Of a DNA stretch of 64,000 nucleotides, positions 1-63,400 are shown one piece after another; the first letter of the stretch is position 1, and every line of letters starts with the position of its first letter. The position numbers were made by a program, and so were the translations under genes. Source of the stretch: Macrostomum lignano (Eukaryota). Under the pieces are notes generated by a model. It did not search any database, was not told the origin of the DNA, and saw only the letters and a list, made by a program, of their open reading frames with translations. The stretch is taken from NCBI GenBank assembly GCA_002269645.1, contig NIVC01000147.1, positions 9,570 to 73,569 of the forward strand, written 5' to 3'.

Positions 1-270
1 AGCCTTGACATCTCAGGAATTCCCAGTAAGCCTTGACATCTCAGGAATTCCCAGTAAGCCTTGACATCTCAGGAATTCCCAGTAAGCCTTGACATCTCAG
101 GAATTCCCAGTAAGCCTTGACATCTCAGGAATTCCCAGTAAGCCTTGGCATCTCAGGAATTCCCAGTAAGCCTTGGCATCTCAGCATTTCCCAGTAAGCC
201 TTGACATCTCAGGAATTCCCAGTAAGCCTTGACATCTCAGCAATCCCCCCGTGAGCCTTGACATCTCAGC
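1..270. repeat. 28-bp minisatellite (AGCCTTGACATCTCAGGAATTCCCAGTA)n, running off the left edge of the window
   Basis: Units start at 1, 29, 57 and so on, and degenerate after about 230. A related motif occurs at about 50770 and 51157-51200. Confidence 0.95.
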
Positions 271-12474: not shown

Positions 12475-12826
12475 TGTGGGGTAGGGTGTCTATGGGGTTG
12501 ACATGTCATTCTATTGAGGTAGTGTATGAGTGGTACGGCTATAGTGTAACTTATTCGGTCGCAGTTCCAATTTCTACTGCCAAACGCTGCCTGCACTCAT
12601 TTATTTCGGATGCAGTTTGCTTTTCAAAAAGAACCCCAGCCACCTGGATTTTGGACACAAAGCGTCGGAGCGGCTTCGATTTTAGACTCGAAGTCTCACG
12701 CACTGAAAGCTTCGACTCAGATTTCCAACGAAAATCGGGTTGTTGAATTCTGTTTGGCACTCGAGTGTGTAACTCTGCTCTTGTTGAGCATGAGCTCAGT
12801 TTCTGCTTAGGTAGTGCCTGCCCAAA

Positions 12827-14880: not shown

Positions 14881-16230
14881 TACAAGAATATAGCACTGTC
14901 TAGAATATACAAGAATATGGCACTGTCTAGAGTGTACAAGAATATGGCACTGTCTAGAGTGTACAAGAATATGGCACTGTCTAGAGTGTACAAGAATATG
15001 GCACTGTCTAGAATGTACAAGAATATGGCACTGTCCAGAATGTACAAGAATATGGCACTGTCTAGAATGTACAAGAATATGGCACTGTCTAGAGTGTACA
15101 AGAATATGGCACTGTCTAGAGTGTACAAGAATATGGCACTGTCTAGAGTGTACAAGAATATGGCACTGTCTAGAATGTACAAGAATATGGCACTGTCTAG
15201 AATGTACAAGAATATGGCACTGTCTAGAATGTACAAGAATATGGCACTGTCTAGAATGTACAGGAATATGGCACTGTCTAGAATGTACAAGAATATGGCA
15301 CTGTCTAGAATGTACAAGAATATGGCACTGTCTAGAGTGTACAAGAATATGGCACTGTCTAGAATGTACAAGAATATGGCACTGTCTAGAATGTACAGGA
15401 ATATGGCACTGTCTAGAATGTACAAGAATATGGCACTGTCTAGAATGTACAAGAATATGGCACTGTCTAGAATGTACAAGAATATGGCACTGTCTAGAGT
15501 GTACAAGAATATGGCACTGTCTAGAGTGTACAAGAATATGGCACTGTCTAGAGTGTACAAGAATATGGCACTGTCTAGAATGTACAAGAATATGGCACTG
15601 TCCAGAATGTACAAGAATATGGCACTGTCTAGAATGTACAAGAATATGGCACTGTCTAGAGTGTACAAGAATATGGCACTGTCTAGAGTGTACAAGAATA
15701 TGGCACTGTCTAGAGTGTACAAGAATATGGCACTGTCTAGAATGTACAAGAATATGGCACTGTCTAGAATGTACAAGAATATGGCACTGTCTAGAATGTA
15801 CAGGAATATGGCACTGTCTAGAATGTACAAGAATATGGCACTGTCTAGAATGTACAAGAATATGGCACTGTCTAGAATGTACAAGAATATGGCACTGTCT
15901 AGAATGTACAAGAATATGGCACTGTCTAGAATGTACAAGAATATGGCACTGTCTAGAATGTACAAGAATATGGCACTGTCTAGAATGTACAAGAATATGG
16001 CACTGTCTAGAATGTACAAGAATATTGCACTGTCTAGAATGTACAAGAATATGGCACTGTCTAGAATGTACAAGAATATGGCACTGTCTAGAATGTACAA
16101 GAATATGGCACTGTCTAGAATGTACAAGAATATGGCACTGTCTAGAATGTACAAGAATATGGCACTGTCCAGAATGTACAAGAATATGGCATTGTCTAGA
16201 ATGTACAAGAATATTGCACTGTCCAGAGCG
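14881..16230. repeat. 27-bp minisatellite, right part
   Basis: About 50 units of the same monomer as 12827-13629. Confidence 0.97.
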
Positions 16231-16959
16231 TACACGAAAGGAAGCTGTCACACATTTAGAAAAGAATCATTCATTCACGGACACAAGAGATGAGCCGTGC
16301 ATTCCTGGTCAATCTGTTTTTCTATTTACTTTTTCAAGACTTTGGCTATCTTAGCCTGGGATCTCCAGTTCATGGACTACCAATCTCTGCCGAATCTGTT
16401 AAGTGCGCAGACTGTTATTTCCCACCGAGAGTCGCTCGCATGCCTCCCCCCCCACAGCCCAGTTGCTGCTGCCAATTCCACGCAAAATGCTTCTAACCTT
16501 CAAGAAGTTTCTCCTGCGAACGCGGAAGAATCCCAGTGTGCCTCGGCGCACTAATAGGTGACGCAGAAAAGATGCTGCTTTTAAGGACCGATGCTTGCGG
16601 TGTCGCTACATGGTTGGAATCCCAAGAAAAACGGCTGCATTTGCCTGCTATTCTTGCATTACCTGTTTCAATTTAGCATTATTGATCTAACTGTTCTTCT
16701 CTTCTGCTCGTTAGGCCTGAAGCAGTTCTAGGCCAAACTGCGCACAATTGAATTCTATTTTTATAAAGCAGAAGAAACCTTTATGTCTTTTAGCTGATGA
16801 TGATTTAGCTGCCCTACATTCTCTAAAAGATTGTCCAGTGCAGGGGACGGTGTTTTAAGCAGGATCTTTGAGTGATGTCTGTCTTCTGTTCGGGTTGGTA
16901 AATAACTAAAATTTATTACAGCCAGCCTCCCTGCTATTGCGCACCACATCCTAAAGCTA

Positions 16960-21094: not shown

Positions 21095-21586
21095 ATGGCA
21101 AAACTCTGGATTTTGTACTCGCTACTTGATATGCTCAATTATGAGCTGGTTTGTGCTGCCAGCACTAACCGGCGTTTGTGTACATCGCCAACCCCCCGGC
21201 TTGCGCCCACCCCCCTCCCTCGGGAGGGTTTTTATGCCTGCGGGCTAGCTGAGTTTGTGTCTCGCTGCAATCGTTTGAGGCTACCGCAGCAGGGCCTGTT
21301 CACCATCTCTGGCGGTTCAGCCGGCAGCGCCTCTCTGACATCCCGGATGTTGGACGTGCAGTTCAAGTGCTGGCTCAATAAGGCGGGCATCAGCGCGGCA
21401 GGCTACTCCGTGCACAGCTTGCGGAGGGGTGCAGCCAAATGGGCGGCGCGTTTCGGTCTGTCAGTCAGGGAGATCCAGAGCGTGGGCGACTGGCGCAGCG
21501 ACGCAGTGAACTGTTATTTGTCGCCGGGCGATGCAGCTTTCGGCGCTGCTCGGAAGCTGGCGGTTGCTTTGCTTTCTAGGTGTTGA
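21095..21586 (+). mobile_element. C-terminal fragment of a DIRS/Ngaro-type tyrosine recombinase
   Basis: LNKAGISAAGYSVHSLRRGAAKWAARFGLSVREIQSVGDWRSDAVNCYL contains the HxxR box and the GxWxSDAxxxY catalytic Tyr motif. The N-terminal half is absent. Confidence 0.85.
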
Positions 21587-27541: not shown

Positions 27542-29202
27542 ATGGCTGCTGCCTCTAAACCTAGTGAAAGTGCAAAGCACATCATCTTCACTGGGCCACC
27601 TGGTAGGTAAAAGTTTTACTGCTTAATTGGCTCATTACTAACTGACTTGATCATGCTCTCAGCATCCGCCCACAACCTGGGCCTGTTATCTAATCACCAA
27701 TGCAGGTGTAGGCAAGACAACGGCCACTCGTCGATTGGCTGAGCTCTGGCGCAGTCGCGGTCGCCCAGCTGCTGGCTTCTACACAGAGGAGGTCCGGTCC
27801 AGCGGCAGACGGATCGGTTTCGATGTGGTGTCCATTTTCGATGGCAGCCGCGCCACGCTAGCAAGGACCGAGTGAGTGGCTTCAGAATGAATTTTTTTAA
27901 TTTTTATCTGTTTAAGACTTTAAGGCTTCCAGGCTAGAGTTGAACTATTGATATTCCATTATCCGCTACTCTTTCACGAAGTGGCAACCCCTTACCAAGT
28001 CCCTCAGTAGGCGGCAACCCTTTCCCCAGTCCTTACATAGGTGGCAACCCCATCCCCAGTCCTTCAGTAGGCGACAACCCATTCCCCAGTCCTTCAGTAG
28101 GCGACAACCCTTTCCCCAGTCTTTCAGTAGGCGACAACCCTTTCCCCAGTCCTTCATTTGGCGGCAACTCCTTCCGCAGTCCTTCAGTAGACGGCAACCC
28201 TTTCTCCAATCCTTACATAGGCGGCAACCCCTTCCCCAGTCCTTCAGTAGGCGGCAACCCTTTCCCCAGTCCTTCAGTAGGCGGCAAACCATTTCCCCAG
28301 TCCTTCAGTAGGCGGCAACCCTTTCCCCAGTCCTTCAGTAGGCGGCAAACCATTTCCCCAGTCCTTCAGTAGGCGGCAACCCTTTCTCCAATCCTTCAGT
28401 AGGCGGCAACCCCTTCCCCAGTCTTTCAGTAGGCGACAACCCTTTCTCCAGTCCTTCATTTGGCGGCAACCCCTTCCCCAGTCCTTCAGTAGGCGGCAAC
28501 CCTTTCCCCAGTCCTTCAGTAGACGACAACCCTTTCCCCAGTCCTTCAGTAGACGGCAACCCTTTCCCCAGTCCTTCAGTAGGCGGCAACCCTTTCCCCA
28601 GTCCTTCAGTAGACGGCAACCCCTTCCCCCGTCCTTCTGAGGGCTCTCGGTGTTTGGCTATAAAGTCTGTTAATTATAGAAAAATCCCTAGTAAAATGGA
28701 ATACAAAGCAGTAGTACTTAAAAAGTAGTTACTAATGCATCTAGTAACTGCACTCCCAGTCTCCCTGCATCCACACTGCAGACCGTTCGCTGACTTTGTC
28801 CGGTTCGGACAGCCGCCGCCGCCTCGCGTCTCTGCCTATCTAGTCAACACTGGCGCCTTTGAAGCCGCCGCCGAGGCCGCTCTGTCGCCAGCCCTGGCCA
28901 GACTGCAGCAGCCGGATCGGGCCGCTAGCGGGCCACCGCTGCTAGTTGTCATTGACGAAGTTGGCAAGATGGAGTTATTCGGCAGTCAGTTTAAGCGGCT
29001 TGTTGAACACCTGGTTAATCCGGCTCTGACACCACCCTATCAGTTGCTAGTGACCCTGCCAGTAGCTAAGGGGTCGCGGGAGGACCCGTTAATTAGTCGG
29101 CTACGGGCAGACAATAAATTTTTCAAGTACTCGTTGAGTCGCGAGTCGCGCGATGAAGCGCCAGATTCTGCGTTGAAAGCATTGGAATCTGCTGTGTCTT
29201 AG
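27542..29202 (+). CDS. NTPCR: Nucleoside-triphosphatase NTPCR/THEP1; exons 27542-27602, 27706-27871 and 28782-29202 (215 aa)
   Basis: HIIFTGPP|GVGKTT Walker A, GFYTEEVR..GRRIGFDVV, and VVIDEVGKMELF Walker B. The GT-AG phases (1 and 2) are consistent. Confidence 0.95.
27980..28635. repeat. 30-bp minisatellite (GCGGCAACCCTTTCCCCAGTCCTTCAGTAG)n in NTPCR intron 2
   Basis: Tandem units, some of 31 bp. Confidence 0.95.
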
Positions 29203-29788: not shown

Positions 29789-32700
29789 ATGTCCGCCAGC
29801 CAAAAGGACTTTGACTCAGCAGGCGCCGGCTCCGCATCGCCGCAGAGCGCCGCCCGTCTGCTAGTGAAGCAGGCAAGGCAGCAGTTTAATGCCAACGACT
29901 TCTTAGCGTCTCTGACCAGCCTCCAGGCTGCCTACGCCATCAATCCCAGCGAGTCGCTGCTCAACCGAATCTCGCGCCTGAAGGAATTCCTCGAAGATGC
30001 CAAGGACGGCAGCGATGCTGAAGAAGGCAATGCCGGCAGCGACGAAGAAGCCGGCGGCGCCGACGAGAATTGCAGCGAAGTCGACGCCGACGACGTTGAC
30101 TTTGTAGAGCCGCCTCGCCTGAAGTCGACATTCGCTAAGCCGAAGCCGCGGCCGCGAATTGTCGACGAGGACGACGATGACGAACAGGACGATCGCGACA
30201 ACTGGCGCCGGTCCAAGCATCAGCTGCCGCCGCGAAGGAGGTCGCCGCCGCGGTCGCACATCTCTAAGTCGCCGCTGGCTCTGTCCAACAACAGCGAAGC
30301 CGGACACCGCGATATCGGCGGCGGCAGCAGCAAGTTGGCCGAGGTGTGCCCGGGATTCTCGCTGTGCCGGCCGCTCTTTGATAAGCTGTACGATCACCAG
30401 CGAGCCGGCATCTCCTGGCTGTACAGCCTGCACAAAGCCGGCAAGGGCGGCATCCTGGCCGACGATATGGGACTGGGTGAGTGCTCAACAGCTCTGCAAT
30501 AATCGCCCCTCTCTTACTGATTGCGTGTGAACTCTATCACTATTTTGTTTCACGATAAGCATGTAGCCCCCTTTAAAATCACCCTTCAATATCCCCAACA
30601 TTACCCTTTAATATCCCCAACATCACCCTTTAATATCCCCAACATCACCCTTTAATATCCCCAACATCACCCTTTAATATCCCCAACATCACCCTTTAAT
30701 ATCCCCAACATCACCCTTTAATATCCCCAACATCACCCTTTAATATCCCCAACATCACCCTTTAATATCCCCAACATCACCCTTTAATATCCCCAACATC
30801 ACCCTTTAATGTCCGCCACCATCACCCTTCAATATCTCCAACATCACCCTTTAATGTCCGCCACCATCACCCTTTAATATCCCCAACATCACCCTTTAAT
30901 ATCCCCAACATCACCCTTTAATATCCCCAACATCACCCTTTAATATCCCCAACATCACCCTTTAATATCCCCAACATCACCCTTTAATATCCCCAACATC
31001 ACCCTTTAATATCCCCAACATCACCCTTTAATGTCCGCCACCATCACCCTTGAATATCCCCAACATCACCCTTTAATATCCCCAACATCACCCTTTAATA
31101 TCCCCAACATCACCCTTTAATATCCCCAACATCACCCTTTAATATCCCCAACATCACCCTTTAATATCCCCAACATCACCCTTTAATATCCCTAACGTCA
31201 ACCTCAAAACGCGACTAAATACATCGCCTAGAATCGCCCTGACACCGCACCCACTGTCACCCTTACACTTGCCATAAACATCGGCCCGCGCCACCCGCAG
31301 GCAAGACCATCCAGACCATCGCATTCCTGCGCGGCCTTTTCGATCAAAACGAGATTCGATCCGTTCTGCTAATCATGCCCGTGTCGGTCATCATGACCTG
31401 GCGCCAGGAGTTCGACAAATGGGCCCGCAACTTGCCTGTGTACTTGTACCACGGCCAGACTAAGCGCCAGATGGAATACGATCTGTCCAGGGTGCAGCGG
31501 CGCTCCGGCGTGCTCATCACCACCTACGGCATGGTGGTGTCCTCCTGGCAGAGTCTGGCCTGCGACCAGAATAACCGCACCTTCGTTTGGGACTATGTTA
31601 TTCTGGACGAGGGCCACAAGATCAAGAATTCTAGCCGAAAGACATCCAAGGTCTGTCTGTCTGTCTGTCTGTTTTAGTGTCTGTTTGTCTGTCTGTCTGT
31701 CTTTCTTAGTGTCTGTCTGTCTGTCGTTGTGGATAATTTTAAATAGGTTTTCTTGCACCTAAGTGTATATCTTGAATATGTGAATTGATTTGTTTAAAAC
31801 TATTTATTTTATTTTGTCTTTCAAGGTCACATTTTTTATTTCCTTTTTTGCGTCTTCATTTCCCACACTGACTACTGCCTATATACCACTGCTTAAAAAA
31901 GAACAACAAGCTCCCTGATTTGCCTTCCACAGGGTGTTTTTGCCATCGACGCCAAGCACAGACTGCTCCTCACTGGCACAGCGGTGCAAAACAACCTCAT
32001 GGAGATGTGGGCTCTATTCGACTTCGCCCATCACGGCACCCTGCTGGGCACGCAGAAGACCTTCAAAACCGAGTACGAGCGGCCAATCATTCGGTCCAGG
32101 GAGAAGGACGCCACAGCGTCCGAGCGTCGCTACGGAGACCAGATGGCGCAGAGCCTGAAGGCCCGCATCGAGCCGTACTTCCTGCGCCGGACCAAGCACC
32201 AGATCCAGGCCAGCACCAAGCAGCAGGGCCAGAAGCCCTCGGCCGGGCCGGCAATGCCCTCCCTGACTAGAAAGAACGACGTAGTTGTCTGGCTGTTCAT
32301 GTCTCAGACTCAGCTCAACATCTACCGCGACTTTCTCCAGCTGGACCAGGTCAAGGCCCTGTTAGTGAATAGCAACCGCCGGTCGCCTTTAGTGGAGCTG
32401 ACCGTGCTGAAGAAGATTTGCGATCATCCTCGCCTGCTGTCGGCCAACCAGTGCCAGGATCTGGGCCTGAGCCGCGCCGAGAACATGCTGGATAATAGCC
32501 GGGCCGCTATCCATCTGCCAGTGTCCATGCTGACGGAAGAGAGCGGCAAGATGGCTTTCTTGGCCAAACTAATGGCCCGGCTGAAGGCCGAGGGGCATCG
32601 GACTCTGGTGTTCTCACAGTCGCGCAAGATGCTGGACATTGCCGAGCGAATTCTGGAGGAGCGCGGCCATCGGCTGTCTAGACTGGACGGCCGGGTAACC

Positions 32701-35700
32701 CAGGTGGCTGACCGGCAGCACATTGTCAGCACATTCGCTCGGGACAAGAGCATTGACGCTTTTCTGCTCACCACACAGGTGAGTTTTCATCCATTAGTGT
32801 CGTATCTAAATCTGCAAATCATCTAGAGGTTTCATATCTAATCATTAGATGTGGCGTATCTAAATCATCTAGAGGTTTCATATCTAATCATCCAGAGGTG
32901 GCGTATCTAAATCATCTAGAGGTTTCATATCTAATCATGAGTAACCTGAGTAAGTGTCCGACAGTAGCAGCAGCAGGCCGACTCCCGAGACTTCGCAGTG
33001 GTCCATGTGGACGCGGCTCCATGGAGTTGTCTCCGGTGGCCATATGTCGATTTTGCGATTAGACAGCGGGCGGGACTCAGCGCATGTCCGGCATCTCTCC
33101 ATATACTGTCGCACATCTCGATCCAATCCAGGCCACTAGAATTCCTTGCAGATGTGGGTCTTAGTGCTCTCAAAGCTAGGATGCACTTCATCATGAGCCG
33201 CTTCCAGAATCCTCCGACGAAGCACTGCTGGAGGTACCACTCGAGTTCCATGGATCACCAAGCCGTTATCAGTCGACAGGGAAGTTCTACAGGCTTTAAA
33301 GGGTCGCTCAACCTGAGAAACCTGACCCCAACGCCCGGTTCGGATTCTCTGTTGCAGTCTCTTCAGCACCGAGCAGTTCAGGGTGGCTTCCGGAGCTCCT
33401 GCCGAGTCATCTGCGCTCAGCACTGAATCCGCTTGATGCACCGTGTCCTCATCGACTTCTGCAGTGTAGTTGAGCCTTGACAAGGCATCAGCGTCCAGTA
33501 GCTGCTTTCCTGGAATGTATTCCACAGAGTAATCGAATGCAGACAGTCTCAATGCCCATCTAGTCAGCCTAGCTGAAGCTGTTTTTGACAGGCTTTTGCT
33601 CGGGTTGAAAATAAATCTTAGAGGCTCATAGTCTGTTTGCAAGATAATTTTTTCCCGATCAACATTTTCGCTCGCTCAACTGCCCAGACTATGACTAGCG
33701 CTTCCCTTTCAATGTTAGAGTAGTTGGACTCCGCGGAGGTGAGCATCTTCGATAGGTACATCACCGGGTGACCTGCTTGAGTCAGAACAGCGCCTACAGA
33801 TTTTTCACTAGCATCAACTCGAAGGCAGACTGGCGCATTGATGTCATATGGCTTGGCACACGGCTTGGAGGCGAGACATGCTTTTACTTCGGCAAAGGCA
33901 GCCTCGGCTGCCGGGCTCCCATCGAATGCACTGTCGCTCCTCCTCAGCTCATGCAATACTCGGCAGCGCTCGGAGAAGTTGGGAATCGTCTGCCGTAGAA
34001 CTGTGCGAGTCCTAGAAACTTCTCTAGGTCCTTTTTACTCTTGGGGCTGGCTACCTGTAGCACTCTCTCAACCATCTCTGGGTCTGGTTTGATGCCTTCT
34101 GCATCGATAACATGCCCAAGAAACTTCAGGCTGCTAGTCTCCATAACGTACTTTGACTCGTTAATTTTGACATTGGCCTCTCGCAGTCTTTTCAAGACAC
34201 TTTCCCTGATCTGCTGTAGCTCTAGCGTAGAACTCCCACCAATCAGCACACCATCTTGATAAGTTATAACACTCGGATGCTCACTGATCAGTTCCTCCAT
34301 CTCACGCTGAAAGACTGATGGTGACACCTTGATACCGTAGGGCAGTCTGTTGAAGCAGTAGCAGCCGAATGGGGTGTTGATGGTGGTGACCGCCTTGGAC
34401 TGCTCATCCAGGAGAATCTGGTAGTAGGCGTCTGACAGATCCAGGTCTCTATGGAGGGTGTGAGATACGTCTGGCCTTGAATCAGCTGATTGACGGCCGT
34501 GTAGTCGCCGCAGATCCTCACGGTCTCCCGGCCAGGCTTGGCGGTGACTACGATCGGGCTGCCCCACTCCGATGAGTTCACTTTCTCAGCAATTCCAGCC
34601 GCCTCCATCAGGTCGAGTTCCTTCTTCACCAGCGGTTTTAATGCCATTGGAAGCTTACAGGCCGGTTGGAACACTGGCTCGGCGCTGGACTTGAGTCGGA
34701 TCTCCAACCGCGCCCTTGATTCCAGCCAACTTCAGATATTTGTTGCTCACCTCCTCCGAATGGTGCATCTGCTGGCTGCTTAGCAGATTCCGGCCCAGAA
34801 GACCGAATTGCTGGTGACAGTCTATCACCGGGAGTTCCATTGTCGCAAATCTCCCGTTGTCGCCTTCAGTCTCCACCAGGCACTGTAGGAGGCCAAGCTG
34901 TCTCATCACGTGACCATCATATGACAGCATGCGTGACTTCGGCTTCTTGAGTGCTGGACGTCCAAGGTCGATCCAGATTTTCTTGGAGATCAATGAGCAG
35001 GAGGCGCCGCTGTCCCTCTCCATTTTCACCTGCTTACCGTTGATCTTCACAAAGCAGAAGTCAGCTGGCTTGCCTTCAGTGCAGAAAAACACAGCTTCAT
35101 CCGGGTGGGCTTTGGGCTCCGTGAAGTGCGCCTTGGCGGTGCCGCGACATGCCCTGGCAAAGTGTCCCTGCTTTCCGCACTTGTGGCAAGCAGCTTTCAA
35201 GGCCCGACATTCAGACACATTACGATGCTGAGCCAAGCCGCATCTTCCACACTTGCCCTTGAACTGGTGAACAGTGTGAGCCGATTGCTGCTCCAGCTCT
35301 TGTGACACTGCCTGATGCACAGCTGGCTCAGTTGATGCTCCGATGTTCTGAGCTGCCGATGTTGGTGTCGTGAAGTCGTTGACTAGTTGCAGCTGCTGAA
35401 CAAACTCAGTGATCTGATCTACAGTCAGCTCTTGCGTCATCCCACGCTCCAAAACCTTATTTCTCGTGTCCTGGCTGACTAGGCCAGCGATGAGGCGCGA
35501 TGTCCTCCCACCGCATTCCTGCGATCTTCTTTGGAGCCACCAGCTGTTTGACCTTCATAAGTTGACTTACGCCCAGCGATCCTAGAAATGCGTCTGTCAA
35601 GCCGAGGTTGTTCTCCTCGTCTCTGACTCCTTTGGACCTCGCCTGAGCGTCGAACACTTCTACCCAGGCTTGCAGTTCGTCCACATTTTCCAGAGTCAGT

Positions 35701-41408: not shown

Positions 41409-42115
41409 TGCTAAGGATCAGATGAAGCTACAACTGGCTAAGGATCAGATGAAGCTACAGCTGGCTAAGGATCAGATGAAGCTACTGCTGGCTAAGGATC
41501 AGATGAAGCTACAGCTGGCTAAGGATCAGATGAAGCTACTGCTTGCTAAGGATCAGATGCAGCTACTGCTGGCTAAGGATCAGATGAAGCTACAGCTGGC
41601 TAAGGATCAGATGCAGCTACAGCTGGCTAAGGATCAGATGAAGCTACAGCTGGCTAAAGATCAGATGAAGCTACAGCTGGCTAAGGATCAGATGAAGCTA
41701 CAGCTGGCTAAGGATCAGATGCAGCTACAACTGGCTAAGGATCAGATGCAGCTACTGCTGGCTAAGGATCAGATGAAGCTACAGCTGGCTAAGGATCAGA
41801 TGAAGCTACTTCTGGCTAAGGATCAGATGAAGCTACAGCTGGCTAAGGATCAGATGAAGCTACAGCTGGCTAAGGATCAGATGAAGCTACAGCTGGCTAA
41901 GGATCAGATGAAGCTACAGCTGGCTAAGGATCCGATGAAGCTACAACTGGCTAAGGATCAGATGAAGCTACAGCTGGCTAAGGATCAAATGAAGCTACTG
42001 CTGGCTAAGGATCAGATGCAGCTACTGCTGGCTAAGGATCAGATGAAGCTACAGCTGGCTAAGGATCAGATGAAGCTACTGCTGGCTAAGGATCAGATGA
42101 AGCTACAGCTGGCTG
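41409..42115. repeat. 27-bp minisatellite (GCTAAGGATCAGATGAAGCTACAGCTG)n
   Basis: About 26 units. They explain the KLQLAKDQM pseudo-ORF. Confidence 0.96.
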
Positions 42116-42967
42116 GGATCAGTGCTGCTCTGGGTTTATTTTCTCACTCCGCCTTGGGTAATGATTGAACAATGCATTGTTGAAGTGAAAAAAAGTTTTA
42201 TTGCCAATGCTTTGAGATTAAACCTGCCACCACATACTGAACTCGTGTTGACTCAGTCATATTTACCCAGCTCTGTAAAAGTTCACTGTTGTCTCTCAAT
42301 GCAGCAGCACCAGCTGCCCGTGGTCGCCAGGGGTTAGTGAAATGAGCTGCAACGCCTCGCTGCATCCGGATGTCCGGAGCCCCCAGCAGCTAAGTCAAGT
42401 AATTCTCTCAATGCGTGTTTTCTGTTGTCTTCTGGATGTGGCTGTGCTGCACGTGATTAGTGATGGATGCAGGCTCTGCTTCAGGGTTTTTTTAGTCAGA
42501 GGCAGGAGGCTGTGTGCACCCTGCATGGCACACTTTAAGCGACATTGCCACACAACCGGCGAGAGGCATTGCTGCCCATTCTGCCGACTCCAGTCATGCT
42601 CAGACGCAGTCATACGCACAGGCACGCACTCACACAGTAGTGTACAGCGCCTCTAACTTCACTGTGCCTTGGGGGTTGGCCCTCAAGGGCATTAATTGCA
42701 CGAGCACAGCCAAGCCGAGATTCCAATTTTAGCCCCAAATACCGGTAAATGACTGTACTTGAAATCAAGTCTGGGCCGATGGCGCATCAAGCCGTTTGCA
42801 GCTGGCCGCTAGTCCCGGCAATAGTCGGGAGACAGAATTCCCACTCGAAGGGCCAGTTGTCTCATCTCGCTAATTGTATTTAAAAGCAAATCGGCCATCA
42901 AAGCGAGTCAAGTGTCAATTACTTTTGCTTTTAAGCGCCGGCATTTGTGCAATTGCTGACTTGGAAA

Positions 42968-43234
42968 TCAGCCGGGGTACGCGGCCGGCCCGTACTGCTG
43001 CAAGTAGCGCCGTCGCAGGCGCAGCTGAACCGCACCTCCGCCTAGAAGGCCACCGTTGATCCGCTTCTCCTCATCCTCCCAGGAGTCGTCGTCGTCAACT
43101 TCTTCAGCGTCGCCGTCGTTGTCGTCGTTCTCGACGTCCTCGACAGAGACGGCTAGCCGCAGAGCAGACAGGTGCAACAGGAGCAGCAGTGGGAGCAGAG
43201 CTTGGCAGAACCGTGAGCTCATCTCCATTCGCAA
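42968..43234 (-). CDS. Putative secreted neuropeptide/prohormone precursor, 88 aa
   Basis: Hydrophobic signal peptide, acidic propeptide, KR and RLRRR cleavage sites, and a C-terminal Gly immediately before the stop. GC-rich single exon. Confidence 0.72.
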   Translation of the reverse strand: MRMEMSSRFCQALLPLLLLLHLSALRLAVSVEDVENDDNDGDAEEVDDDDSWEDEEKRINGGLLGGGAVQLRLRRRYLQQYGPAAYPG

Positions 43235-43288
43235 ATGCCGAATCGCTTGGAGATGTGAGAGCGGCGCAGCTCTTTATTTTGCTTGCTG

Positions 43289-43324
<36 letters not shown>

Positions 43325-43699
43325 GACGGCTGGATGGCGAGTGCTCAACTTGGACTCAGCTCACGCAGAGTCGCATGGATGTACACTTGGTCTTTTCTTT
43401 TTGCGTTTTGTAACTGTCCAGCATTATTCTCTCACTTGAGAAGGCCAATGTTAGTTCAGATTTGAGAGTCGGAAAAGATGTGAGATTAGGGCAGTTTTGA
43501 GCTGTTTGGTGTGCAAACATTCGTTTGGTTAGAGATTCACATCTACCTGGCACTGGCTGTGTGCTGTAACTGTCTGTCACCTTATATTTACCTGGAGAAG
43601 AGGTGGAAATTAATGTACATGGTTTGAATATATAAATGTGTGGATAAATCTGATTTCCTCATCATGTTGCACCATTCCAGTAACGTTTGGGCAGATAAA

Positions 43700-44269: not shown

Positions 44270-44710
44270 GGAGAGGGGAGAGCCGAGATAGGAAATGAGA
44301 GGGAAAATGAGATAAGAGCTAGGAAGAGATAAGAGAAGAGAAAGAAAATGAGATGAGAGCTAGGATGGGATAAGAGAAGAGAAAGAAAATGAGATGAGAG
44401 CTAGGATGAGATAAGAGAAGAGAAAGAAAATGAGATGAGAGCTAGGATGAGATAAGAGAAGAGAAAGAAAATGAGATGAGAGCTTGGATGAGATAAGAGA
44501 AGAGAAGAAAATGAGATGAGAGCTAGGACGAGATAAGTGAAGAGAAAGAAAATGGGATAAGAAGAGAGCCAGGAAGAGATAAGAGAAGAGAAAGAAAATG
44601 AGATGAGAGCTAGGAAGAGATAAGAGAAGAGAAAGAAAATGAGATGAGAGCTAGGATGAGATAAGAGAAGAGAAAGAAGATGAGATGAGAGCTAGGATGA
44701 GATAGGAGAT
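44270..44710. repeat. Purine-rich minisatellite of about 41 bp (GAGATGAGAGCTAGGATGAGATAAGAGAAGAGAAAGAAAAT)n
   Basis: About 10 units. Confidence 0.92.
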
Positions 44711-52531: not shown

Positions 52532-53897
52532 ATGGGAAAGCCACCACGACGAGTCATAGCGACCGCCGGGTTTGCACTGCTGCTACTGCTGCTCTGTACC
52601 TGGTCTTTGAGTGACATTAAAGACAAGGCGACAATCAACAAAAACTTTTTCAAGGACCCGGTCGATTTGGAGTCCATCGGGCACTTCGTGTACAGCGCCT
52701 ACTTCGACACCAGACCGACGCTCAATGGTCGCAAGTACGTCCGCGTGATCACTGTGCTCGATACGAAGGCCTACGAGAAGGAGCTCATCTGCCAGTTCAT
52801 GCACCAGTCCGGTCACCTCTCCTTCAGCACAGTCGCCAAGAGGTCTGCTATCGGCGCTGGCATGGGTCACAAGCAGCACTATTACAAGGAGTTCGTGCTG
52901 TCTTGCCCCGTCGCAGATGACCTCCGCTTTGCTGCCTTCGTCTTCATTCAAACTGGCGACGCCTCTCTGAGATCGCAGGTGATGCGAGTGAGACACAACC
53001 CTCTGTCTCTGGGTCAGAGTCCAAACAACCCTCGTCAGATCATCAACTGCGTGTCGGTGACCTTTGGCAAGCCGGATGAGTACAGACTGATCGAGTGGCT
53101 CGAGGCTCAGAGACTGCTCAAGATGGACAAAGTGCAGCTGCACTTTTATCACATGACGAACAAAAACTTTGAATCAGTAGCTCAAGCCTACAGTGCAGAA
53201 GGATTTGTGAATGTGAGAAAGCTCGGATGTCGGTTTTGTGAAGCCGGTCAGGAAGAGTGGCTGGGACTGCTGCTGATGTCTCCCGCCATCAACCAGTGCT
53301 TCTATGAGGTAATAGACACGTCATGGTGGACAGTTTTCAGATTCGTGGCGTCACTCGTCCTTCCTTATCGAATTGCAGAACCTCGGCCGCTACACGTACA
53401 CGGCGGTGTTCGACCTGGACGAGATCATCGTGCCACAGCAGCACCCGGACTATCCCACTCTGCTGAGCGCGCTGGAGAAACGAGCGAACTCGAGCTCGTT
53501 CGCCTTCAGGAACTGGTACCACTTCAGCGAGCTCGGAGAGGACTCCTCGGTGGACCCCAGGATGTACATGCTCCGGCACCCGTACAGCACGAAACAGGAG
53601 AGCCCGCCTGACTATTCTATCAAGTCGATTCACAAATCCTGCTGTGTGGTGGCCTTGCACAACCATTTCAGCTGGGAGGACGTCCCCAAGCCAAACACGA
53701 AACGATCCCGCTACAACGCAGAAGTCCAAATCGGCGTCAATGAGCACTACAAGCGCTGTCACTTAGATAAGGAAGCTTGCAAGGAGATGACGGATGTCAA
53801 GCATAATAAGGACGGCTTCAGACTCCGTCAGCTGTTGGGCAAGGAGCTTACGGCAGCTTTTCGCGGCAAAGTAAAGCAAATATTTGGCGCAAGTTAA
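52532..53897 (+). CDS. Glycosyltransferase family 92 (DUF23) type II membrane protein, copy A; exons 52532-53308 and 53379-53897 (431 aa)
   Basis: N-terminal TM segment, FVYSAYFD, LIEWLEAQRLL, and NQCFYE|NLGRYTYTAVFDLDEIIVP (DxDE). The intron is 70 bp, phase 0. Confidence 0.88.
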
Positions 53898-56608: not shown

Positions 56609-59188
56609 TCACCCAAAAATCTGCTTCACTCTGCTACGAAATGACTCCGTGAGCACCTTGCCGAGCAGTTGACGAAGCCGCAATCCGTCTTTTCTGTCTT
56701 TCACGTCAGTCATCTCCTTGCAAGTTTTCTCGTCAAAATGGCACTTCTTGTAGTGCTCATTGAGTCCCAGATCGATAGGCACTGGGAGATGACCGCTTTG
56801 GGTGTTCGGCTTGGGGACGTCCTCCCAGCTGAAATGGTTGTGCAAGGCCACCACACAGCAGGATTTGTGAATCGACTTGATAGAATAGCCAAGCGGGCTC
56901 TCCTGTTTCGTGCTGTACGGGTGCCGGAGCATGTACATCCTGGGGTCCACCGAGGAGTCCTCTCCGAGCTCGCTGAAGTGGTACCAGTTCCTGAAGGCGA
57001 ACGAGCTCGAGTTCGCTCGTTTCTCCAGCGCGCTCAGCAGAGTGGGATAGTCCGAGTGCTGCTGTGGCACGATGATCTCGTCCAGGTCGAACACCGCCGT
57101 GTACGTGTAGCGGCCGAGGTTCTGCAATTCGATAAGGAAGGACGAGTGACACCACGAATCTGAAAACTGTCCACCATGACGTGTCTATTACCTCATAGAA
57201 GCACTGGTTGATGGCGGGAGACATCAGCAGCAGCCCCAGCGACTCTTCCTGACCGGCTTCACAAAACGGACATCCGAGCTTTCTCACATCCACAAATCCT
57301 TCTGCACTGTAGGCTTGAGCTACTGATTCAAAATTTTTGTTCGTCATGTGATGAAAGTGCAGCTGCACTTTGTCCATCTTGAGCAGTCTCTGAGCCTCGA
57401 GCCACTCGATCAGTCTGTACTCATCCGGCTTGCCAAAGGTCACCGACACGCAGTTGATGATCTGACGAGGGTTGTTTGGACTCTGACCCAGAGACAGAGG
57501 GTTGTGTCTCACTCGCATCACCTGCGATCTCAGAGAGGCGTCGCCAGTTTGAATGAAGACGAAGGTAGCAGAGCTGAGGTCATCTGCGACGGGGCAAGAC
57601 AGCACGAACTCTTTGTAATAGTGCTGCTTGTGACCCATGCCAGCGCCGATAGCAGACCTCTTGGCGACTGTGCTGAAGGAGAGGTGACCGGACTGGTGCA
57701 TGAACTGGCAGGTGAGCTCCTTCTCGTAGGCCTTCCTATCGAGCACAGTGATCACGCGGACGTACTTGCGACCGTTGAGCGTCGGTCTGGTGTCAAAGTA
57801 GGCGCTGTACACGAAGTGCCCGATGGACTCCAGATCGATCTGGTCGCGGCGCAGCTGCTGCTGTATGACTTCGCTAGCAGTTTGTTTAAGCTCTGCTGCA
57901 TGTGGCATGGTTGCTGGTATTCTGAACTTGTCATTGCCTGCAAGTTTGTGCGTGCTTCTTAGAAACAGAATGGTCAGCAGCAGCAAACCGACTCCGAGCA
58001 GTATGACTGTAGTGAAGCTTTTGTGCCCGGTGAACTGCGGGTTTTATGTCAGCAACGGTTCAAGGTCAGTTCAAAGACTGCACTTGGGGAGCTGTTTTGA
58101 TTACCTGTTCTCAGCGAGATGAAGATGAAATCACTTATAGTTTGCCTGTACTCTTAATGATAGACTTCAGGACTGTTTCTACAGACAGTCCTGAAATCTA
58201 TGGCTGCAGGGACAGTATCTGAGTCTGGTTTCTGAGTCTTGCCAGTGCGAGAGGCTTGTCGGTTCCAGTGCAGTTAGGCTTTGAGAATTGGGCTTTGGGC
58301 TGCTGAGTAAACCATATGCTATATAAATTATTTGCCCATGTCCCCCCCCCCCCGAGACTTGTCTATGGCTTTAGCGATTGCAACAATCCCTTTAGACTTT
58401 GAGTTCAATAAGTTTTAGATATTGAAGCAGCGCATAGCAAATCAAACTTGCTGATGCAGATAAAGTGCGAGCACAAGCAGCGCTGAGTTGCTGCGTGCGA
58501 GGCTGTACAACAGACCCTACTTTCAGTATCCAGGGAAGTTCGCATTCATTAAAGCATTCTCGATTTTTTCTCTTTAAATTCGATATCTTCAGAATGTTAG
58601 ACATCATGTTAAAATAATTTCATTAGTATTTAACATTAAAATTAGTTCTAAAATGGCGCACAGACGAGTCGTGATGGGCTGGGGAGCGCGAAGGCTGCTT
58701 CTTCTACGCCGCCGCCCCTATGTGTACTTGCAGCCTTCCGCCACAGAAATTCATTAATTTGGAGTTTTATAAATACGTTTTATGTAGTCTATGGCCGGAC
58801 CCCATTGCCCAGCTGGCTTCATTGATTGTGGCCGGAAACAAAGACAGGGGAAGGGAAGTGTTTCTGTAGTCTATGGCCGGACCCATTGCCCAGCTGCTTC
58901 ATTGATTGTGGCCGGAAACAAAGGCAGGGGAAGGGAAGTGTTTCTGTAGTCTATGGCCGGACCCCATTGCCCAGCTGGCTTCATTGATTGTGGCCGCAAA
59001 TGGCTGAGGACTGGTTTATGGGCGAGGGCGAAGCCTATCGGGGAAGTAACGCGCCCTATGACAATAAATCGTATATTTCTCTCAACTCGAGAACGGAGAT
59101 ATCCAGCGAAATTGGTTTTTTAGGGTAGCTGCATGTTTTTTCTTCCTCTGAATTCAATATAAAGACAGAAACTTGCACTCACCAACAT
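56609..59188 (-). CDS. GT92 (DUF23) glycosyltransferase, copy B; exons 59188-59183 (ATG TTG, tentative), 58034-57192 and 57121-56609 (453 aa)
   Basis: Core nearly identical to copy A, including the 70-bp intron. The TM segment begins after the acceptor CCCGCAG| at 58035. An ATGTTG|GTGAGT at 59188 would supply an in-phase start. Confidence 0.82.
58783..58997. repeat. Unit of about 80-82 bp repeated 2.6 times (TGTAGTCTATGGCCGGACCCCATTGCCCAGCTG...)
   Basis: Copies start at 58783, 58865 and 58945. Confidence 0.9.
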
Positions 59189-60490: not shown

Positions 60491-63400
60491 ATGTCGAACG
60501 TGAAGGCGGCGGCGACCGTGCTTACTGAGTACGGGCACCGGTCCACTCTGCACGGACTGAGCCACATGTTTCAGAGCGGCGACCTGTGGCGCAAGGCGTT
60601 CTGGCTTGTGCTGACCTTCGCAGCCAGCGGGGCCTGCGTCTATCACATCTACGCCACGGTTAGCAACTACCTGGAGTCGCCCATCACCAGCATCTACCGG
60701 GACGAAGGCCCGCAGGCCCTGTTCCCCGGCGTGACCATCTGCAACCTGAAGCCCGTGTCCGAGGCGCTGCTTCACGCCGAGGAAGAGAAAGCCGCGCTGT
60801 TCCACCACCTGGACCAGGTGTGGAATTTTTTTGATAACTGGCTGTTCGGATTGCGAAGCCGGAAACACAGCGAGACCCGAGTCGATACAAGGAAAGGCAG
60901 CGCGAACTGCTCAAGACGTACACGGACATTTTCTGGGTATCGGACGACACCGCAGAGTTCGGCTCAGTGACAGACACACGCTGCTGATGTGCCTGTATAA
61001 GAACAAGCACTGCAATGCCTCCAACTTTAAATTAGTTCAGCACCACCGTTACTGGCAACTGCTACACGTTCCAGCCCCTCGATGGCGACCGCACGATTGA
61101 CAACAGCGATCAGGACAGCGGGCTGAGGCTGATTCTGTTCACCGACTCAAACTTCGACAGCAACAGGCTGGACGACTCGGTGAATTATCTCCGAAGCATG
61201 ACCAGAGAGGACGAGATCACCAATCCGTATTCGCTGCCGCACGTACTTGGGTCGCGGAAATCGGACCTTAAATCAGGTGCTTACCGGCAACAAATGGGAG
61301 GCTGAAGGCCTGAGAATCTTCATACACAATGAGAGCCAGTTTCCACCACATCAGATATTGCCTTTGACGTGTCGCAGCGGCGCCTCAACCACCATTGAGG
61401 TCAACACAAAGCAGGTGAACACGTTGAACAGGCCACCATCGCATGTGTGCAAGCAGAAGAGCGGAGACCATCTCCTATGTGAGGGTACTTCGGCCCGAAC
61501 GTCACTGGACTACGGAGCTATCGTTTAACTCAACCGCGAAGCAGTGATGGAGGCCCAGCAGAAGATGATATTTGACAAATGCGGTTGCCTACACTCATCT
61601 GCTGCCGTTCAAGTTCAACACCAGCTTGTTGTGCCTCTACGCTGATCCGCAGCACAGAATTCACCCTTCCATGGAGTTCATGCAGCGGCTCGCCTGCCAC
61701 ACCAACTCATTCAAACTGGCTGAGCAGAAAACCTCGGAACTGCTGCAGCAGAAAGATGAATACAAGCCTTGCACCAGCTGGAAGCTGCAGGCCACCAAAG
61801 TGCAGGTGCCCTGGCCGCGAAGTGACGAGCTGATTGACTTTGTGAACTACGTCTTCATGCCGTCTTACATCGCCGAGCTGCAGAATGAGGACCAGGTTAT
61901 GCACCTGCTGAAGTCGCGGAACAGCCGGGCCGAGGCCATCATTCGGCACCTGTTCAACCCGGACTGCCGGAAGGAGAATGGCACGGACGCACCCTTGGTA
62001 GACTCGTGGTGCATCTCCAGAGCCAAGTTGAAGGCAAACGTTGCCCAGATCTGGATCAAACCTGCCTCGACCCACGCGGGCGTCTACATGGAGGAGTACA
62101 GCTACGACTGGCCGGAGGCGCTCAGCGAGGTTGGCGGCATCTTCGGCCTGTGGATGGGTGAGGCTGAGGTTTTTGAAGATCTCTGAATTTTTTTATCCCC
62201 ATTTAACGATCTACTAATAGTAATATGTAGCCCAAGGCCCAGCTGGTTGTACTTAATACAGCCTAGGGCATAAATGCACTCGCACTTGCGGTGTCAGATC
62301 CCGTTGCTAGTGAGCAAAAAGGTAAGAAAGTGCAGCCCGCACACACCGGGATCCCGCTGATACCAAGGGACTCGGAGGGCCTCCTTCAACCGTCCTTCTC
62401 GGTGCAGCAGCAAAGCGAAATGTCAAGCTTCGAGCCAACGGCGCGCCAGGCCGGTAATCTATTCCCAGTCTTGCATTTCTCCCCCTGTCTCTGCCTCGCT
62501 TCCTGCCTGCCTGCCGCAGATGGCTGCGATAAGACAAATTGCACAGGTAGGCCTGTGCCGGGTCTAGAGAGGCCAAACTACATGTGCATTTTCTGAGGGA
62601 GGCGAATTACGAAATTAGTTGTCGAAGTGGATGCACTGTGCATAGCAAGGCTGGAATACCCACCAGCATTGCCCAGCATCTATATAAAATAAACCCAAGC
62701 TGTGCATTTCGGTATCTGTCTCGGAGCAGAGCTTCAATTTATCTGCACAAGCGGGCTCTCCGGCAGAGGAGGGTCGCAAGACAGCTTGGTAGCGGCTGTT
62801 CCTGCCCATCTTTGCAGTCAGTCGTCCCCATATTCCAATTCTCCCATCGCGAAGTCCTGCCCAATACTATTGGTTGATGGGGCAACCGTGCCGCAGCTGT
62901 CAAGTGAACAACAGAGCCCGAAACTCTTGCCCCCCCTCTGGCATGACCAGCCCATCAGTAAGTGATTTTTGTGCACTCGAACACACAGAACGTCACAATG
63001 TGGGAACGTCGTACTCTGTGTGAACTGTGCTGTCAAACTATTTGAAGCTGTAGGAAGCTGAATGAGCTCTGGCCGAACGCGCCATCACTGTGCCACTCAG
63101 CTGACACCAACCCATCCCCAGCTGACACCAACCCATCCCCAGCTGACACCAACCCATCCTCCAGCTGACACCAACCCATCCCCAGCTGACACCAACCCAT
63201 CCCCAGCTGACACCAACCCATCCCCAGCTGACACCAACCCATCCCCAGCTGACACCAACCCATCCCCAGCTGACACCAACCCATCCTCCAGCTGACACCA
63301 ACCCATCCTCCAGCTGACACCAACCCATCCTCCAGCTGACACCAACCCATCCTCCAGCTGACACCAACCCATCCTCCAGCTGACACCAACACATCCTCCA

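What the first reader, a model, noticed from the sequence alone, without database searches (positions are those of the whole stretch)
42968..43234. Candidate unrecognised amidated neuropeptide precursor
Seen: MEMSSRFCQALLPLLLLLHLSALRLAVS (signal-like), then VEDVENDDNDGDAEEVDDDDSWEDEE (acidic spacer), KR (43066-43061), INGGLLGGGAVQLRL, RRR (43015-43007), and YLQQYGPAAYP-G-stop. Established: a signal peptide, acidic spacer, dibasic or furin-type sites and a terminal Gly amide donor are the hallmark prohormone architecture. Inference: it yields YLQQYGPAAYP-amide and a 15-residue Gly-rich peptide. LRRRYLQQ loosely recalls NPY/NPF, but the RxRF-amide end is missing and I cannot place it in a known family. 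A gene this short is easily missed by annotation.
Basis: partly seen in the sequence, partly recalled or inferred. Interest (0 to 1): 0.72.

Follow-up and report, generated by a model that had tools for sequence, protein, structure and literature searches.

The report
Orphan secreted-peptide gene in Macrostomum lignano
A real, transcribed 86-codon flatworm gene (Macrostomum lignano) has the layout of an amidated peptide-hormone precursor, but it is already deposited as a "hypothetical protein", has no detectable relatives, and its role as a neuropeptide is unproven.

Summary
A minus-strand ORF (ATG 43228, stop 42970-42968) encodes a signal-like N-terminus, a 26-residue acidic spacer (net -17), KR, INGGLLGGGAVQLRL, RRR, and YLQQYGPAAYP-Gly-stop. 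The window is Macrostomum lignano contig NIVC01000147.1. The gene was not missed by annotation. Three 95-99% identical homeologous copies carry RNA-seq-derived GenBank models (PAA89577.1, PAA56432.1 = UniProt A0A267E6Y2), all named "hypothetical/uncharacterized". All three copies keep the ORF intact. The reading frame has the best codon bias of the six frames. The CDS is better conserved than its 3' flank. A TATA-like box lies about 30 nt upstream of the implied transcript starts.

No relative was found in 5.8 billion proteins (word index), in 1.84 billion representatives (HMMER), in Pfam, in JGI metagenomes, or in the planarian/schistosome prohormone tables. The NPY/NPF hint fails every defining feature tested.

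The best reading (about 0.4) is a lineage-restricted prohormone giving YLQQYGPAAYP-NH2. Its cell type, its processing and its conservation across species could not be tested here. Rivals are a non-neuronal secreted or defence-type peptide and a young low-complexity ORF with coincidental motifs. Interest is modest.

The parts
43292..43322 (.). (CT/GA)n microsatellite upstream of the promoter. Its length varies among the three homeologs.
   Evidence: TRF; alignment
43272..43280 (-). TATA-like element AAAATAAAG. It contains the in-frame upstream stop TAA (43275-43273). It lies about 30 nt upstream of the transcript 5' ends implied by the deposited partial CDSs. It reads AAAATGAAG in copy L002.
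   Evidence: 5' ends inferred from P0003 (IRHLRMEM..., first codon at 43243) and P0001 (HLRMEM...)
43229..43245 (-). Inferred short 5' UTR of about 15-17 nt. The start codon context is GCGAATGG (A at -3, G at +4).
   Evidence: inference from deposited partial CDS starts
42968..43228 (-). Single-exon CDS of 86 codons plus stop. Deposited on the homeologs as BOX15_Mlig007992g1 and BOX15_Mlig027741g2, and as P0003 on this contig.
   Evidence: codon-usage log-odds best in this frame
43145..43228 (-). Predicted signal peptide, residues 1-28 (MEMSSRFCQALLPLLLLLHLSALRLAVS). Predicted cleavage is AVS|VED.
   Evidence: hydropathy; AF2 helix 5-29; rule-based only, SignalP not run
43067..43144 (-). Acidic spacer, residues 29-54, net charge -17. 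Partly encoded by a degenerate (GAC)n tract. D35G in copy L002.
   Evidence: disordered in AF2
43061..43066 (-). Lys55-Arg56 dibasic site (P1' is Ile).
43016..43060 (-). Predicted peptide 1, INGGLLGGGAVQLRL. It has no Gly amide donor. Predicted [M+H]+ is 1437.85.
43007..43015 (-). Arg72-Arg73-Arg74 tribasic site. RLRR|R also fits the R-X-R-R furin-type consensus.
   Evidence: consensus from general knowledge
42974..43006 (-). Predicted peptide 2, YLQQYGPAAYP. Predicted amide [M+H]+ is 1269.63. Copy L001 has YLQQYGPPAYP.
42968..42973 (-). Gly86 (potential amide donor) followed directly by TGA.
42850..42967 (-). Block of 3' flank shared by all three homeologs, a likely 3' UTR. It has no canonical AATAAA and is more diverged than the CDS. 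Copy L001 loses collinearity beyond it.
   Evidence: Fisher test, CDS 5/261 vs 3' flank 13/130, p = 6e-4

Best explanation
This is a real, independently transcribed, single-exon gene of Macrostomum lignano. It is present on three homeologous or duplicated contigs and encodes an 86-residue preproprotein with no globular domain.

Inferred mechanism:
1. The signal peptide is removed after Ser28.
2. In the regulated secretory pathway a PC2-type convertase cuts after Lys55-Arg56 and within or after Arg72-74.
3. A carboxypeptidase trims the basic residues.
4. Peptidylglycine alpha-amidating enzymes use Gly86 to give (R)YLQQYGPAAYP-NH2.
5. INGGLLGGGAVQLRL and a highly acidic spacer peptide are released as co-products.
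6. The amidated peptide would act as a lineage-restricted signalling peptide (neuropeptide or peptide hormone), presumably through a GPCR.

Shown: the gene, its transcript-based annotation, the ORF anatomy, its intactness in three copies, its codon bias, and its lack of relatives.
Inferred: signal cleavage, convertase cleavage, amidation, cell type and receptor.
For: - ORF and motifs are exactly as described.
- The window is 100% identical to M. lignano NIVC01000147.1.
- There are three deposited protein models. They derive only from RNA-seq/transcriptome evidence plus TransDecoder (PMC5730564).
- The CDS is a single exon in all copies.
- There are no frameshifts or stops in the three copies. 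The 5 substitutions comprise 3 synonymous third-position changes and 2 replacements.
- The CDS is more conserved than its 3' flank, p = 6e-4.
- The sense frame has the highest codon log-odds of the six frames and falls in the top 0.7% of random windows.
- The N-terminus has a hydrophobic core followed by AVS|.
- AF2 gives only a signal helix, a disordered acidic linker and one C-terminal helix, so there is no folded domain.
- The composite motif is about 100-fold rarer than expected per window.
- M. lignano has a nervous-system-expressed PC2 homologue whose RNAi is lethal (PMC4490696), so the processing machinery exists.
- Flatworm neuropeptidomes contain many lineage-specific 'spp/npp' prohormones (PMC2953531).
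Against: - No orthologue or paralogue was found outside the three near-identical copies, so the key test, conservation restricted to cleavage sites and mature peptides, could not be made.
- One of only two replacement changes (A82P) is inside the predicted bioactive peptide.
- The poly-Leu and poly-Asp parts are low-complexity and partly repeat-derived. They could mimic a signal peptide and an acidic spacer.
- The window holds 14 'signal-like' ORFs, against about 6 expected per simulated window. Many of them read through simple or tandem repeats.
- Genome-wide, roughly 100 chance matches to the composite pattern are expected.
- KR|Ile is a disfavoured convertase context.
- No expression-site, peptidomic or functional data were found for the gene IDs.
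Confidence: 0.4

Rival explanations
1. It is a non-neuronal secreted peptide, either a gland or epidermal product or a host-defence-type peptide. The precursor layout (signal, acidic propiece, KR, cationic C-terminal peptide, Gly amide donor) is also the layout of many antimicrobial-peptide precursors, for example amphibian skin peptides. In this reading the RRR is not cut. The product is the 29-residue, net +4 amide INGGLLGGGAVQLRLRRRYLQQYGPAAYP-NH2, which the acidic propiece neutralises until secretion.
For: - The anatomy is the same.
- The uncleaved C-terminal peptide has net charge +4 against a spacer of -17.
- AF2 predicts one continuous helix across residues 53-79, spanning the RRR.
- The gene is an orphan, as is typical of fast-evolving secreted or defence and reproductive-gland proteins. 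M. lignano is known to have many such rapidly evolving genes (PMC7336406 title and abstract).
Against: - Amphipathicity is only moderate. The maximum helical hydrophobic moment is about 0.5 and mean hydrophobicity is about 0. The N-terminal third is Gly-rich and uncharged.
- A tribasic site in the middle of a secreted peptide is normally a convertase target.
- No expression data are available either way.
Confidence: 0.2
2. It is a young, lineage-specific transcribed ORF with no specific peptide-signalling role. A TATA-driven short transcript happens to read through (CTG)n-like and (GAC)n-like low-complexity DNA. This gives a pseudo-signal and an acidic run, and the basic sites and terminal Gly are coincidental.
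For: - There are no relatives at all.
- A degenerate trinucleotide repeat lies under the spacer.
- The window is full of repeat-derived 'signal-like' ORFs.
- About 100 chance matches to the composite pattern are expected genome-wide.
- The homeologs are too similar (95-99%) for the intact ORF to prove selection.
Against: - Codon bias in the correct frame also holds for the non-repetitive C-terminal third (+0.32 bits per codon, best of the three sense frames).
- The 3:2 ratio of synonymous to replacement changes and a CDS more conserved than its 3' flank point towards constraint.
- The start context is strong and the promoter-like element is well placed.
- The model passed the 'coregenes' filter, which removes repeat-overlapping transcripts.
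Confidence: 0.25
3. It is a divergent member of a known family. One option is NPY/NPF, the reader's hint from LRRRYLQQ. The other is the flatworm myomodulin-like NPP-6/mpl family (AVRLMRL-amide), suggested by ...GAVQLRL|RRR.
For: - The short strings 'YLQQ' and 'AVQLRL' loosely resemble the helix of flatworm NPF (from memory) and AVRLMRLa (PMC2953531).
Against: - There is no Pfam Hormone_3 or any other hit at E<=10, and no HMMER hit to any NPY/NPF or mpl protein in 1.84 billion representatives.
- The C-terminus is ...AAYP-Gly, not RxR[FY]-Gly.
- An acidic spacer, not the peptide, follows the signal peptide.
- The CDS has no intron, whereas the planarian paper reports a gene-structure feature shared between chordate and planarian npy genes (PMC2953531; that this feature is a conserved intron is from memory).
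- AVQLRL has no Gly donor and occurs only once.
Confidence: 0.03

Closest known systems
Lineage-specific flatworm prohormones (Schmidtea mediterranea spp-1..19 and npp genes; schistosome Sm-npp genes)
   Same: They are small precursors with a signal peptide and mono- or dibasic sites, often with C-terminal Gly amidation. Many lack homologues outside flatworms or even outside a genus. They are processed by PC2 (PMC2953531; PMC13026224).
   Different: No sequence or motif match was found to any of them. The strings AYPG, YGPA, QQYG, QLRLR, LLGGG and YPG are all absent from the Collins et al. prohormone tables. A Pro-amide terminus was not seen in the catalogues I could read. There is no peptidomic or expression evidence for this gene.
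NPY/NPF superfamily
   Same: Both are secreted, C-terminally amidated peptides with a predicted helix before the C-terminus. There is a loose 'RxYLxQ' resemblance.
   Different: It lacks RxR[F/Y]-amide. It lacks the peptide placed directly after the signal peptide. It gives no PF00159 hit. Its CDS has no intron. Its predicted products are 11 or 29 residues, not 36-40.
Myomodulin-like flatworm NPP-6 / mpl (AVRLMRL-amide)
   Same: The AV-x-L-(x)-RL string lies immediately before a basic cleavage site.
   Different: There is a single copy, no Gly amide donor, and different spacing. There is no detectable precursor homology.
Antimicrobial/host-defence peptide precursors with an acidic propiece (e.g. 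amphibian skin peptide precursors)
   Same: The order is the same: signal peptide, strongly acidic propiece, KR, cationic C-terminal peptide, terminal Gly amide donor.
   Different: There is no sequence similarity. The mature region is only moderately amphipathic and contains an internal tribasic site. No such family is known to me in flatworms.

Membership tests
Amidated neuropeptide / peptide-hormone precursor (generic architecture) | N-terminal cleavable signal peptide | tested here: met
   Arg6, hydrophobic core at residues 8-22, then A-V-S|V. AF2 gives helix 5-29. This is rule-based only; SignalP is not available.
Amidated neuropeptide / peptide-hormone precursor (generic architecture) | Di- or multibasic convertase sites flanking the peptides | tested here: met
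   KR55-56 and RRR72-74 are present in all three copies. Whether they are actually cut was not tested, and KR|I is a less favoured context.
Amidated neuropeptide / peptide-hormone precursor (generic architecture) | Gly amide donor at the C-terminus of the peptide | tested here: met
   Gly86 is followed directly by TGA in all three copies.
Amidated neuropeptide / peptide-hormone precursor (generic architecture) | Cross-species conservation concentrated in mature peptides and cleavage sites | tested here: inconclusive
   No orthologues were found. Among the homeologs, the 2 replacements are one in the spacer (D35G) and one in the predicted mature peptide (A82P).
Amidated neuropeptide / peptide-hormone precursor (generic architecture) | Expression in neurons or endocrine cells, and mature peptides detected by mass spectrometry | not testable with these tools
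   No expression or peptidomic record was found for Mlig007992 or Mlig027741 in the papers and supplements searched.
NPY/NPF superfamily | C-terminal R-x-R-[F/Y]-amide | tested here: not met
   The C-terminus is ...GPAAYP-Gly-stop.
NPY/NPF superfamily | Profile similarity (Pfam PF00159 Hormone_3) and a 36-40 residue peptide directly after the signal peptide | tested here: not met
   Pfam gives no family at E<=10. An acidic spacer follows the signal peptide. HMMER finds no relatives.
NPY/NPF superfamily | Gene-structure feature shared by chordate and planarian npy genes (a conserved intron in the coding region, from memory) | tested here: not met
   The CDS is contiguous in all three annotated copies. 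The feature is as reported for planarian npy genes in PMC2953531; that excerpt does not show the word 'intron'.
Myomodulin-like (flatworm NPP-6/mpl) | -[M/L]RL-Gly followed by basic residues, giving -RLamide peptides, usually in several copies | tested here: not met
   There is a single AVQLRL followed directly by RRR, with no Gly.
Acidic-propiece antimicrobial peptide precursors | Cationic, strongly amphipathic mature peptide | tested here: inconclusive
   Net charge is +4, but the maximum hydrophobic moment is about 0.5 and mean hydrophobicity about 0. AF2 gives helix 53-79 at pLDDT 65-72.

The most novel reading that the evidence does not exclude
The gene founds a new Macrostomum-restricted neuropeptide family with an unusual C-terminal Pro-amide, (R)YLQQYGPAAYP-NH2. 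It would be made in peptidergic neurons by PC2 and amidating enzymes and would act on an orphan flatworm GPCR.
Probability: 0.3. Interest if true: 0.45.

Novelty: new member of a known kind. Interest (0 to 1): 0.3.

Why it matters
If it is confirmed, M. lignano would gain a new, taxonomically restricted signalling peptide. M. lignano is a transgenic, regenerating flatworm model for which I found no published neuropeptidome in the library searched. The gene has a compact TATA-type promoter of under 200 nt that is nearly invariant among homeologs, which could serve as a cell-type-specific driver. It would also be one more example of how fast flatworm peptide repertoires turn over.

If it is not a neuropeptide, the case is a caution. 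In a repeat-rich genome, (CTG)n- and (GAC)n-derived low-complexity ORFs can imitate the signal-spacer-dibasic-Gly 'hallmark'.

Tried and rejected
1. Exact look-up of the 86-aa protein found nothing, because the deposited model on this contig is the 91-aa 5'-open version.
2. Pfam gave no family at E<=10.
3. The word-index search of 5.8 billion proteins and the exhaustive HMMER search of 1.84 billion representatives returned only the M. lignano protein itself.
4. The JGI metagenome scan matched 600 pattern stretches, none confirmed by tblastn.
5. Full-text searches for the peptide strings and for the gene and protein IDs gave 0 papers.
6. Supplement searches for Mlig007992 and Mlig027741 in Wudarski 2017, Brand 2020, Grudniewska 2018 and the 2026 ploidy paper gave nothing. 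The Brand tables contain no IDs of the 'Mlig0079/Mlig0277' form at all, so that absence is uninformative.
7. McVeigh 2009 and Koziol 2016, the main flatworm neuropeptide catalogues and the former including M. lignano ESTs, are not held. Identity with a peptide named there cannot be fully excluded. The UniProt and GenBank names are 'uncharacterized/hypothetical'.
8. Motif search of the Collins 2010 prohormone tables gave 0 hits.
9. The Thiel 2021 spiralian and 2026 schistosome peptidome papers contain no 'Pamide' string, and the schistosome paper no 'YPG'.
10. The bacterial-type promoter/terminator scan is irrelevant to a eukaryote and was ignored.
11. The plus-strand antisense ORF 43056-43439 (Ser-rich, TTG start) was rejected as the antisense reading of the (GAC)n tract. 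Its codon score is lower.
12. Conservation of the ORF against its general flanks is not informative, because typical flank bins vary by about 2-3% per 87 nt, like the ORF. Only the immediate 3' flank is clearly more diverged.

Full report
**1. What is in the sequence.**
- The mechanical ORF 42968..43234 begins at a TTG. The first ATG is at 43228-43226 (context GCGAATGG).
- It encodes 86 residues: MEMSSRFCQALLPLLLLLHLSALRLAVS / VEDVENDDNDGDAEEVDDDDSWEDEE / KR / INGGLLGGGAVQLRL / RRR / YLQQYGPAAYP / G / stop.
- The frame is closed upstream by TAA at 43275-43273, with no earlier in-frame ATG.
- Hydropathy gives a hydrophobic core at residues 8-22, preceded by Arg6 and followed by Ala-Val-Ser|Val. 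This is a textbook n/h/c signal-peptide layout, though I could not run SignalP.
- The spacer has net charge -17. The two predicted peptides have net charges +1 and 0. The uncleaved 29-mer has net charge +4.

**2. Where it comes from, and whether it is a gene.**
- The word-index search of 5.8 billion proteins returned one cluster, 'hypothetical protein BOX15_Mlig007992g1, partial [Macrostomum lignano]', at 99% identity.
- The cluster has three members: PAA89577.1 (89 aa, A82P), PAA56432.1 (= UniProt A0A267E6Y2, 86 aa, D35G), and a 91-aa model identical to the window.
- They lie on three contigs of assembly GCA_002269645.1. The window is 100% identical to NIVC01000147.1 over 20 kb. The other two contigs are 90-99% identical homeologous or duplicated blocks.
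- This fits the genome paper's statement that the assembly carries 180 Mb of non-repetitive blocks duplicated at >=95% identity (PMC5730564).
- The same paper states that the GenBank annotation is the 'coregenes' subset of a genome-guided RNA-seq transcriptome (StringTie/TACO plus a de novo assembly, TransDecoder ORFs, repeat-overlapping and non-coding transcripts removed). So a deposited BOX15 model implies a transcript. The gene is therefore transcribed, and it was not missed by annotation. It is simply unnamed.
- All three models are single-exon CDSs ending at the same Gly-stop.
- The partial models start 15 and 9 nt upstream of the ATG (IRHLRMEM..., HLRMEM...). This places transcript 5' ends near 43245-43237, about 30 nt downstream of a TATA-like AAAATAAAG (43280-43272). 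This step is an inference.

**3. Is it more than chance?**
- A scan of all ATG-initiated ORFs of 40-300 codons finds the composite pattern (signal-like N-terminus, at least two KR/RR sites, C-terminal Gly) once in the window. The mean over 200 second-order Markov simulations is 0.01.
- For a genome of several hundred Mb, that is still of the order of 100 chance occurrences.
- The real window has 14 'signal-like' ORFs against about 6 expected. Many of them are read-throughs of simple or tandem repeats.
- The acidic spacer itself overlies a degenerate (GAC)n tract (TRF, 43085-43142).
- Independent support comes from four observations:
  (a) The transcript-based models above.
  (b) Codon usage. 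With codon frequencies trained on the Pfam-supported exons of this window, the annotated frame scores +0.44 bits per codon. That is the best of six frames and falls in the top 0.7% of random 258-nt windows. The non-repetitive C-terminal third alone is also best in that frame.
  (c) All three copies keep the ORF, with no indel. The 5 substitutions comprise 3 synonymous third-position changes and 2 replacements.
  (d) The CDS (5/261 variable sites) is significantly better conserved than the immediately following 3' flank (13/130; Fisher p = 6e-4). The 190 nt upstream are almost invariant, apart from the (CT)n length and one change in the TATA-like box of L002.
- These observations favour a functional gene. 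They are weak, because the copies are young.

**4. Relatives.**
- There are none. Pfam gives nothing at E<=10.
- The exhaustive HMMER scan of 1.84 billion cluster representatives finds only the M. lignano protein.
- A back-translated pattern scan of JGI metagenomes gives no tblastn-confirmed hit.
- The peptide strings and gene IDs occur in no paper of the library.
- Six motifs from the precursor, including 'YPG', are absent from the planarian and schistosome prohormone tables of Collins et al. 2010.
- Two recent catalogues (spiralian, schistosome) contain no 'Pamide' string.
- The two main flatworm neuropeptide surveys, McVeigh 2009 (which used M. lignano ESTs) and Koziol 2016, are not held. 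A prior naming there cannot be formally excluded.

**5. Structure.**
AlphaFold2 without an alignment (mean pLDDT 67) gives helix 5-29 (the signal peptide), a disordered segment at 30-52 (the spacer), and helix 53-79 spanning peptide 1, the RRR and the start of peptide 2. There is no globular fold. This is what one expects of a precursor for small peptides, and equally of a single helical secreted peptide.

**6. Most likely mechanism.**
I commit to a lineage-restricted prohormone, with confidence about 0.4.
- Signal peptidase cuts after Ser28.
- A PC2-type convertase cuts at KR56| and at RRR74| (or RLRR73|R). M. lignano has a nervous-system-expressed, essential pc2 homologue (PMC4490696).
- A carboxypeptidase trims the basic residues.
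- Gly86 is converted to a C-terminal amide.
- The products would be (R)YLQQYGPAAYP-NH2 ([M+H]+ 1269.63 or 1425.73), non-amidated INGGLLGGGAVQLRL (1437.85) and an acidic spacer peptide.
- Everything after 'the ORF exists and is transcribed' is inference from the general rules of prohormone processing.

**7. Rivals.**
(i) A non-neuronal secreted or defence-type peptide (about 0.2). The signal, acidic propiece, KR, cationic peptide and Gly layout is also that of many antimicrobial-peptide precursors. AF2 draws one helix through the RRR, and the 29-mer is +4. However, its amphipathicity is only moderate (maximum hydrophobic moment about 0.5).
(ii) A young low-complexity ORF whose motifs are coincidental (about 0.25). 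Supporting this are the total lack of relatives, the repeat origin of the spacer and the genome-wide chance expectation. Against it are codon bias, the 3:2 synonymous-to-replacement ratio and the CDS being more conserved than the 3' flank.
(iii) A divergent NPY/NPF or myomodulin-like peptide (about 0.03). For NPY/NPF, every defining feature tested fails: no RxR[FY]-amide, no Pfam Hormone_3 hit, an acidic spacer directly after the signal peptide, and an intronless CDS. For the flatworm mpl/NPP-6 motif AVRLMRL-amide, the look-alike AVQLRL has no Gly donor and occurs only once.

**8. Novelty and verdict.**
- The gene is already in GenBank and UniProt as an uncharacterised protein. What would be new is the functional assignment.
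- As a candidate it is a new member of a known kind. Flatworms have dozens of lineage-specific 'spp/npp' prohormones (Collins et al. 2010).
- A specialist would find it plausible but unsurprising, and unproven until ISH and peptidomics are done.
- Interest is 0.3. The most novel reading not excluded is a Macrostomum-specific Pro-amide neuropeptide family, with probability about 0.3 and interest about 0.45 if true.

Noticed in passing
window 60491-60970 (+) and 61572-62186 (+): Two exon-like ORFs match Pfam ASC (amiloride-sensitive / DEG-ENaC channel), at E = 1.4e-18 for the N-terminal part and 9e-6 for the C-terminal part. Some invertebrate DEG/ENaC channels are peptide-gated. The gene lies about 17 kb from the candidate prohormone. 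No link was tested.
   Followed up: partly
window 52532-53897 (+) and 56609-57986 (-): This is an inverted pair of near-identical glycosyltransferase family 92 (PF01697) genes. Long stretches of the translated ORFs are identical, so the duplication is recent. A GT92 gene also flanks the homeologous copy in L001 (763-2894).
   Followed up: partly
window 12765-16293 (both strands), with 13704-14900 (-): A Mos1/mariner-type transposase ORF (Transposase_1 at 6e-31, HTH_48 at 1e-19) is embedded between two long minisatellite arrays. The arrays read open in several frames and create artefactual ORFs of 250-840 aa.
   Followed up: partly
window 33136-35452 (-): LTR-retroelement remnants are present: reverse transcriptase (RVT_1 at 2.6e-21), plus by eye a gag-like zinc-knuckle/protease ORF and an RNase H/integrase-like ORF. 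They lie next to or inside the SNF2/ERCC6-like helicase gene (31984-32826 (+); SNF2-rel_dom and Helicase_C).
   Followed up: partly
window 41410-42122: A 27-nt minisatellite of 26 copies (94% matches) reads as MKLQLAKDQ repeats. It lies about 850 nt downstream of the candidate gene's stop. A 41/209-nt AG-rich array lies at 44285-44709, upstream of the gene.
   Followed up: no
window 21095-21586 (+): This ORF has a weak tyrosine-recombinase (Phage_integrase) match, E = 2.7e-4, below Pfam's cut-off. It may be a Crypton/DIRS-like mobile-element remnant.
   Followed up: no
L002 about 9950 (equivalent to window 43275): In the third homeolog the TATA-like AAAATAAAG reads AAAATGAAG, which weakens the box and creates an out-of-frame upstream ATG. 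That copy's deposited model is 'g2' of a longer transcriptional unit and is 5'-complete. The copies may therefore differ in how they are transcribed.
   Followed up: no
window 28735-29202 (+): An exon-like ORF matches Pfam NTPase_1 (E = 4e-12). It lies immediately upstream of the SNF2-like gene region.
   Followed up: no
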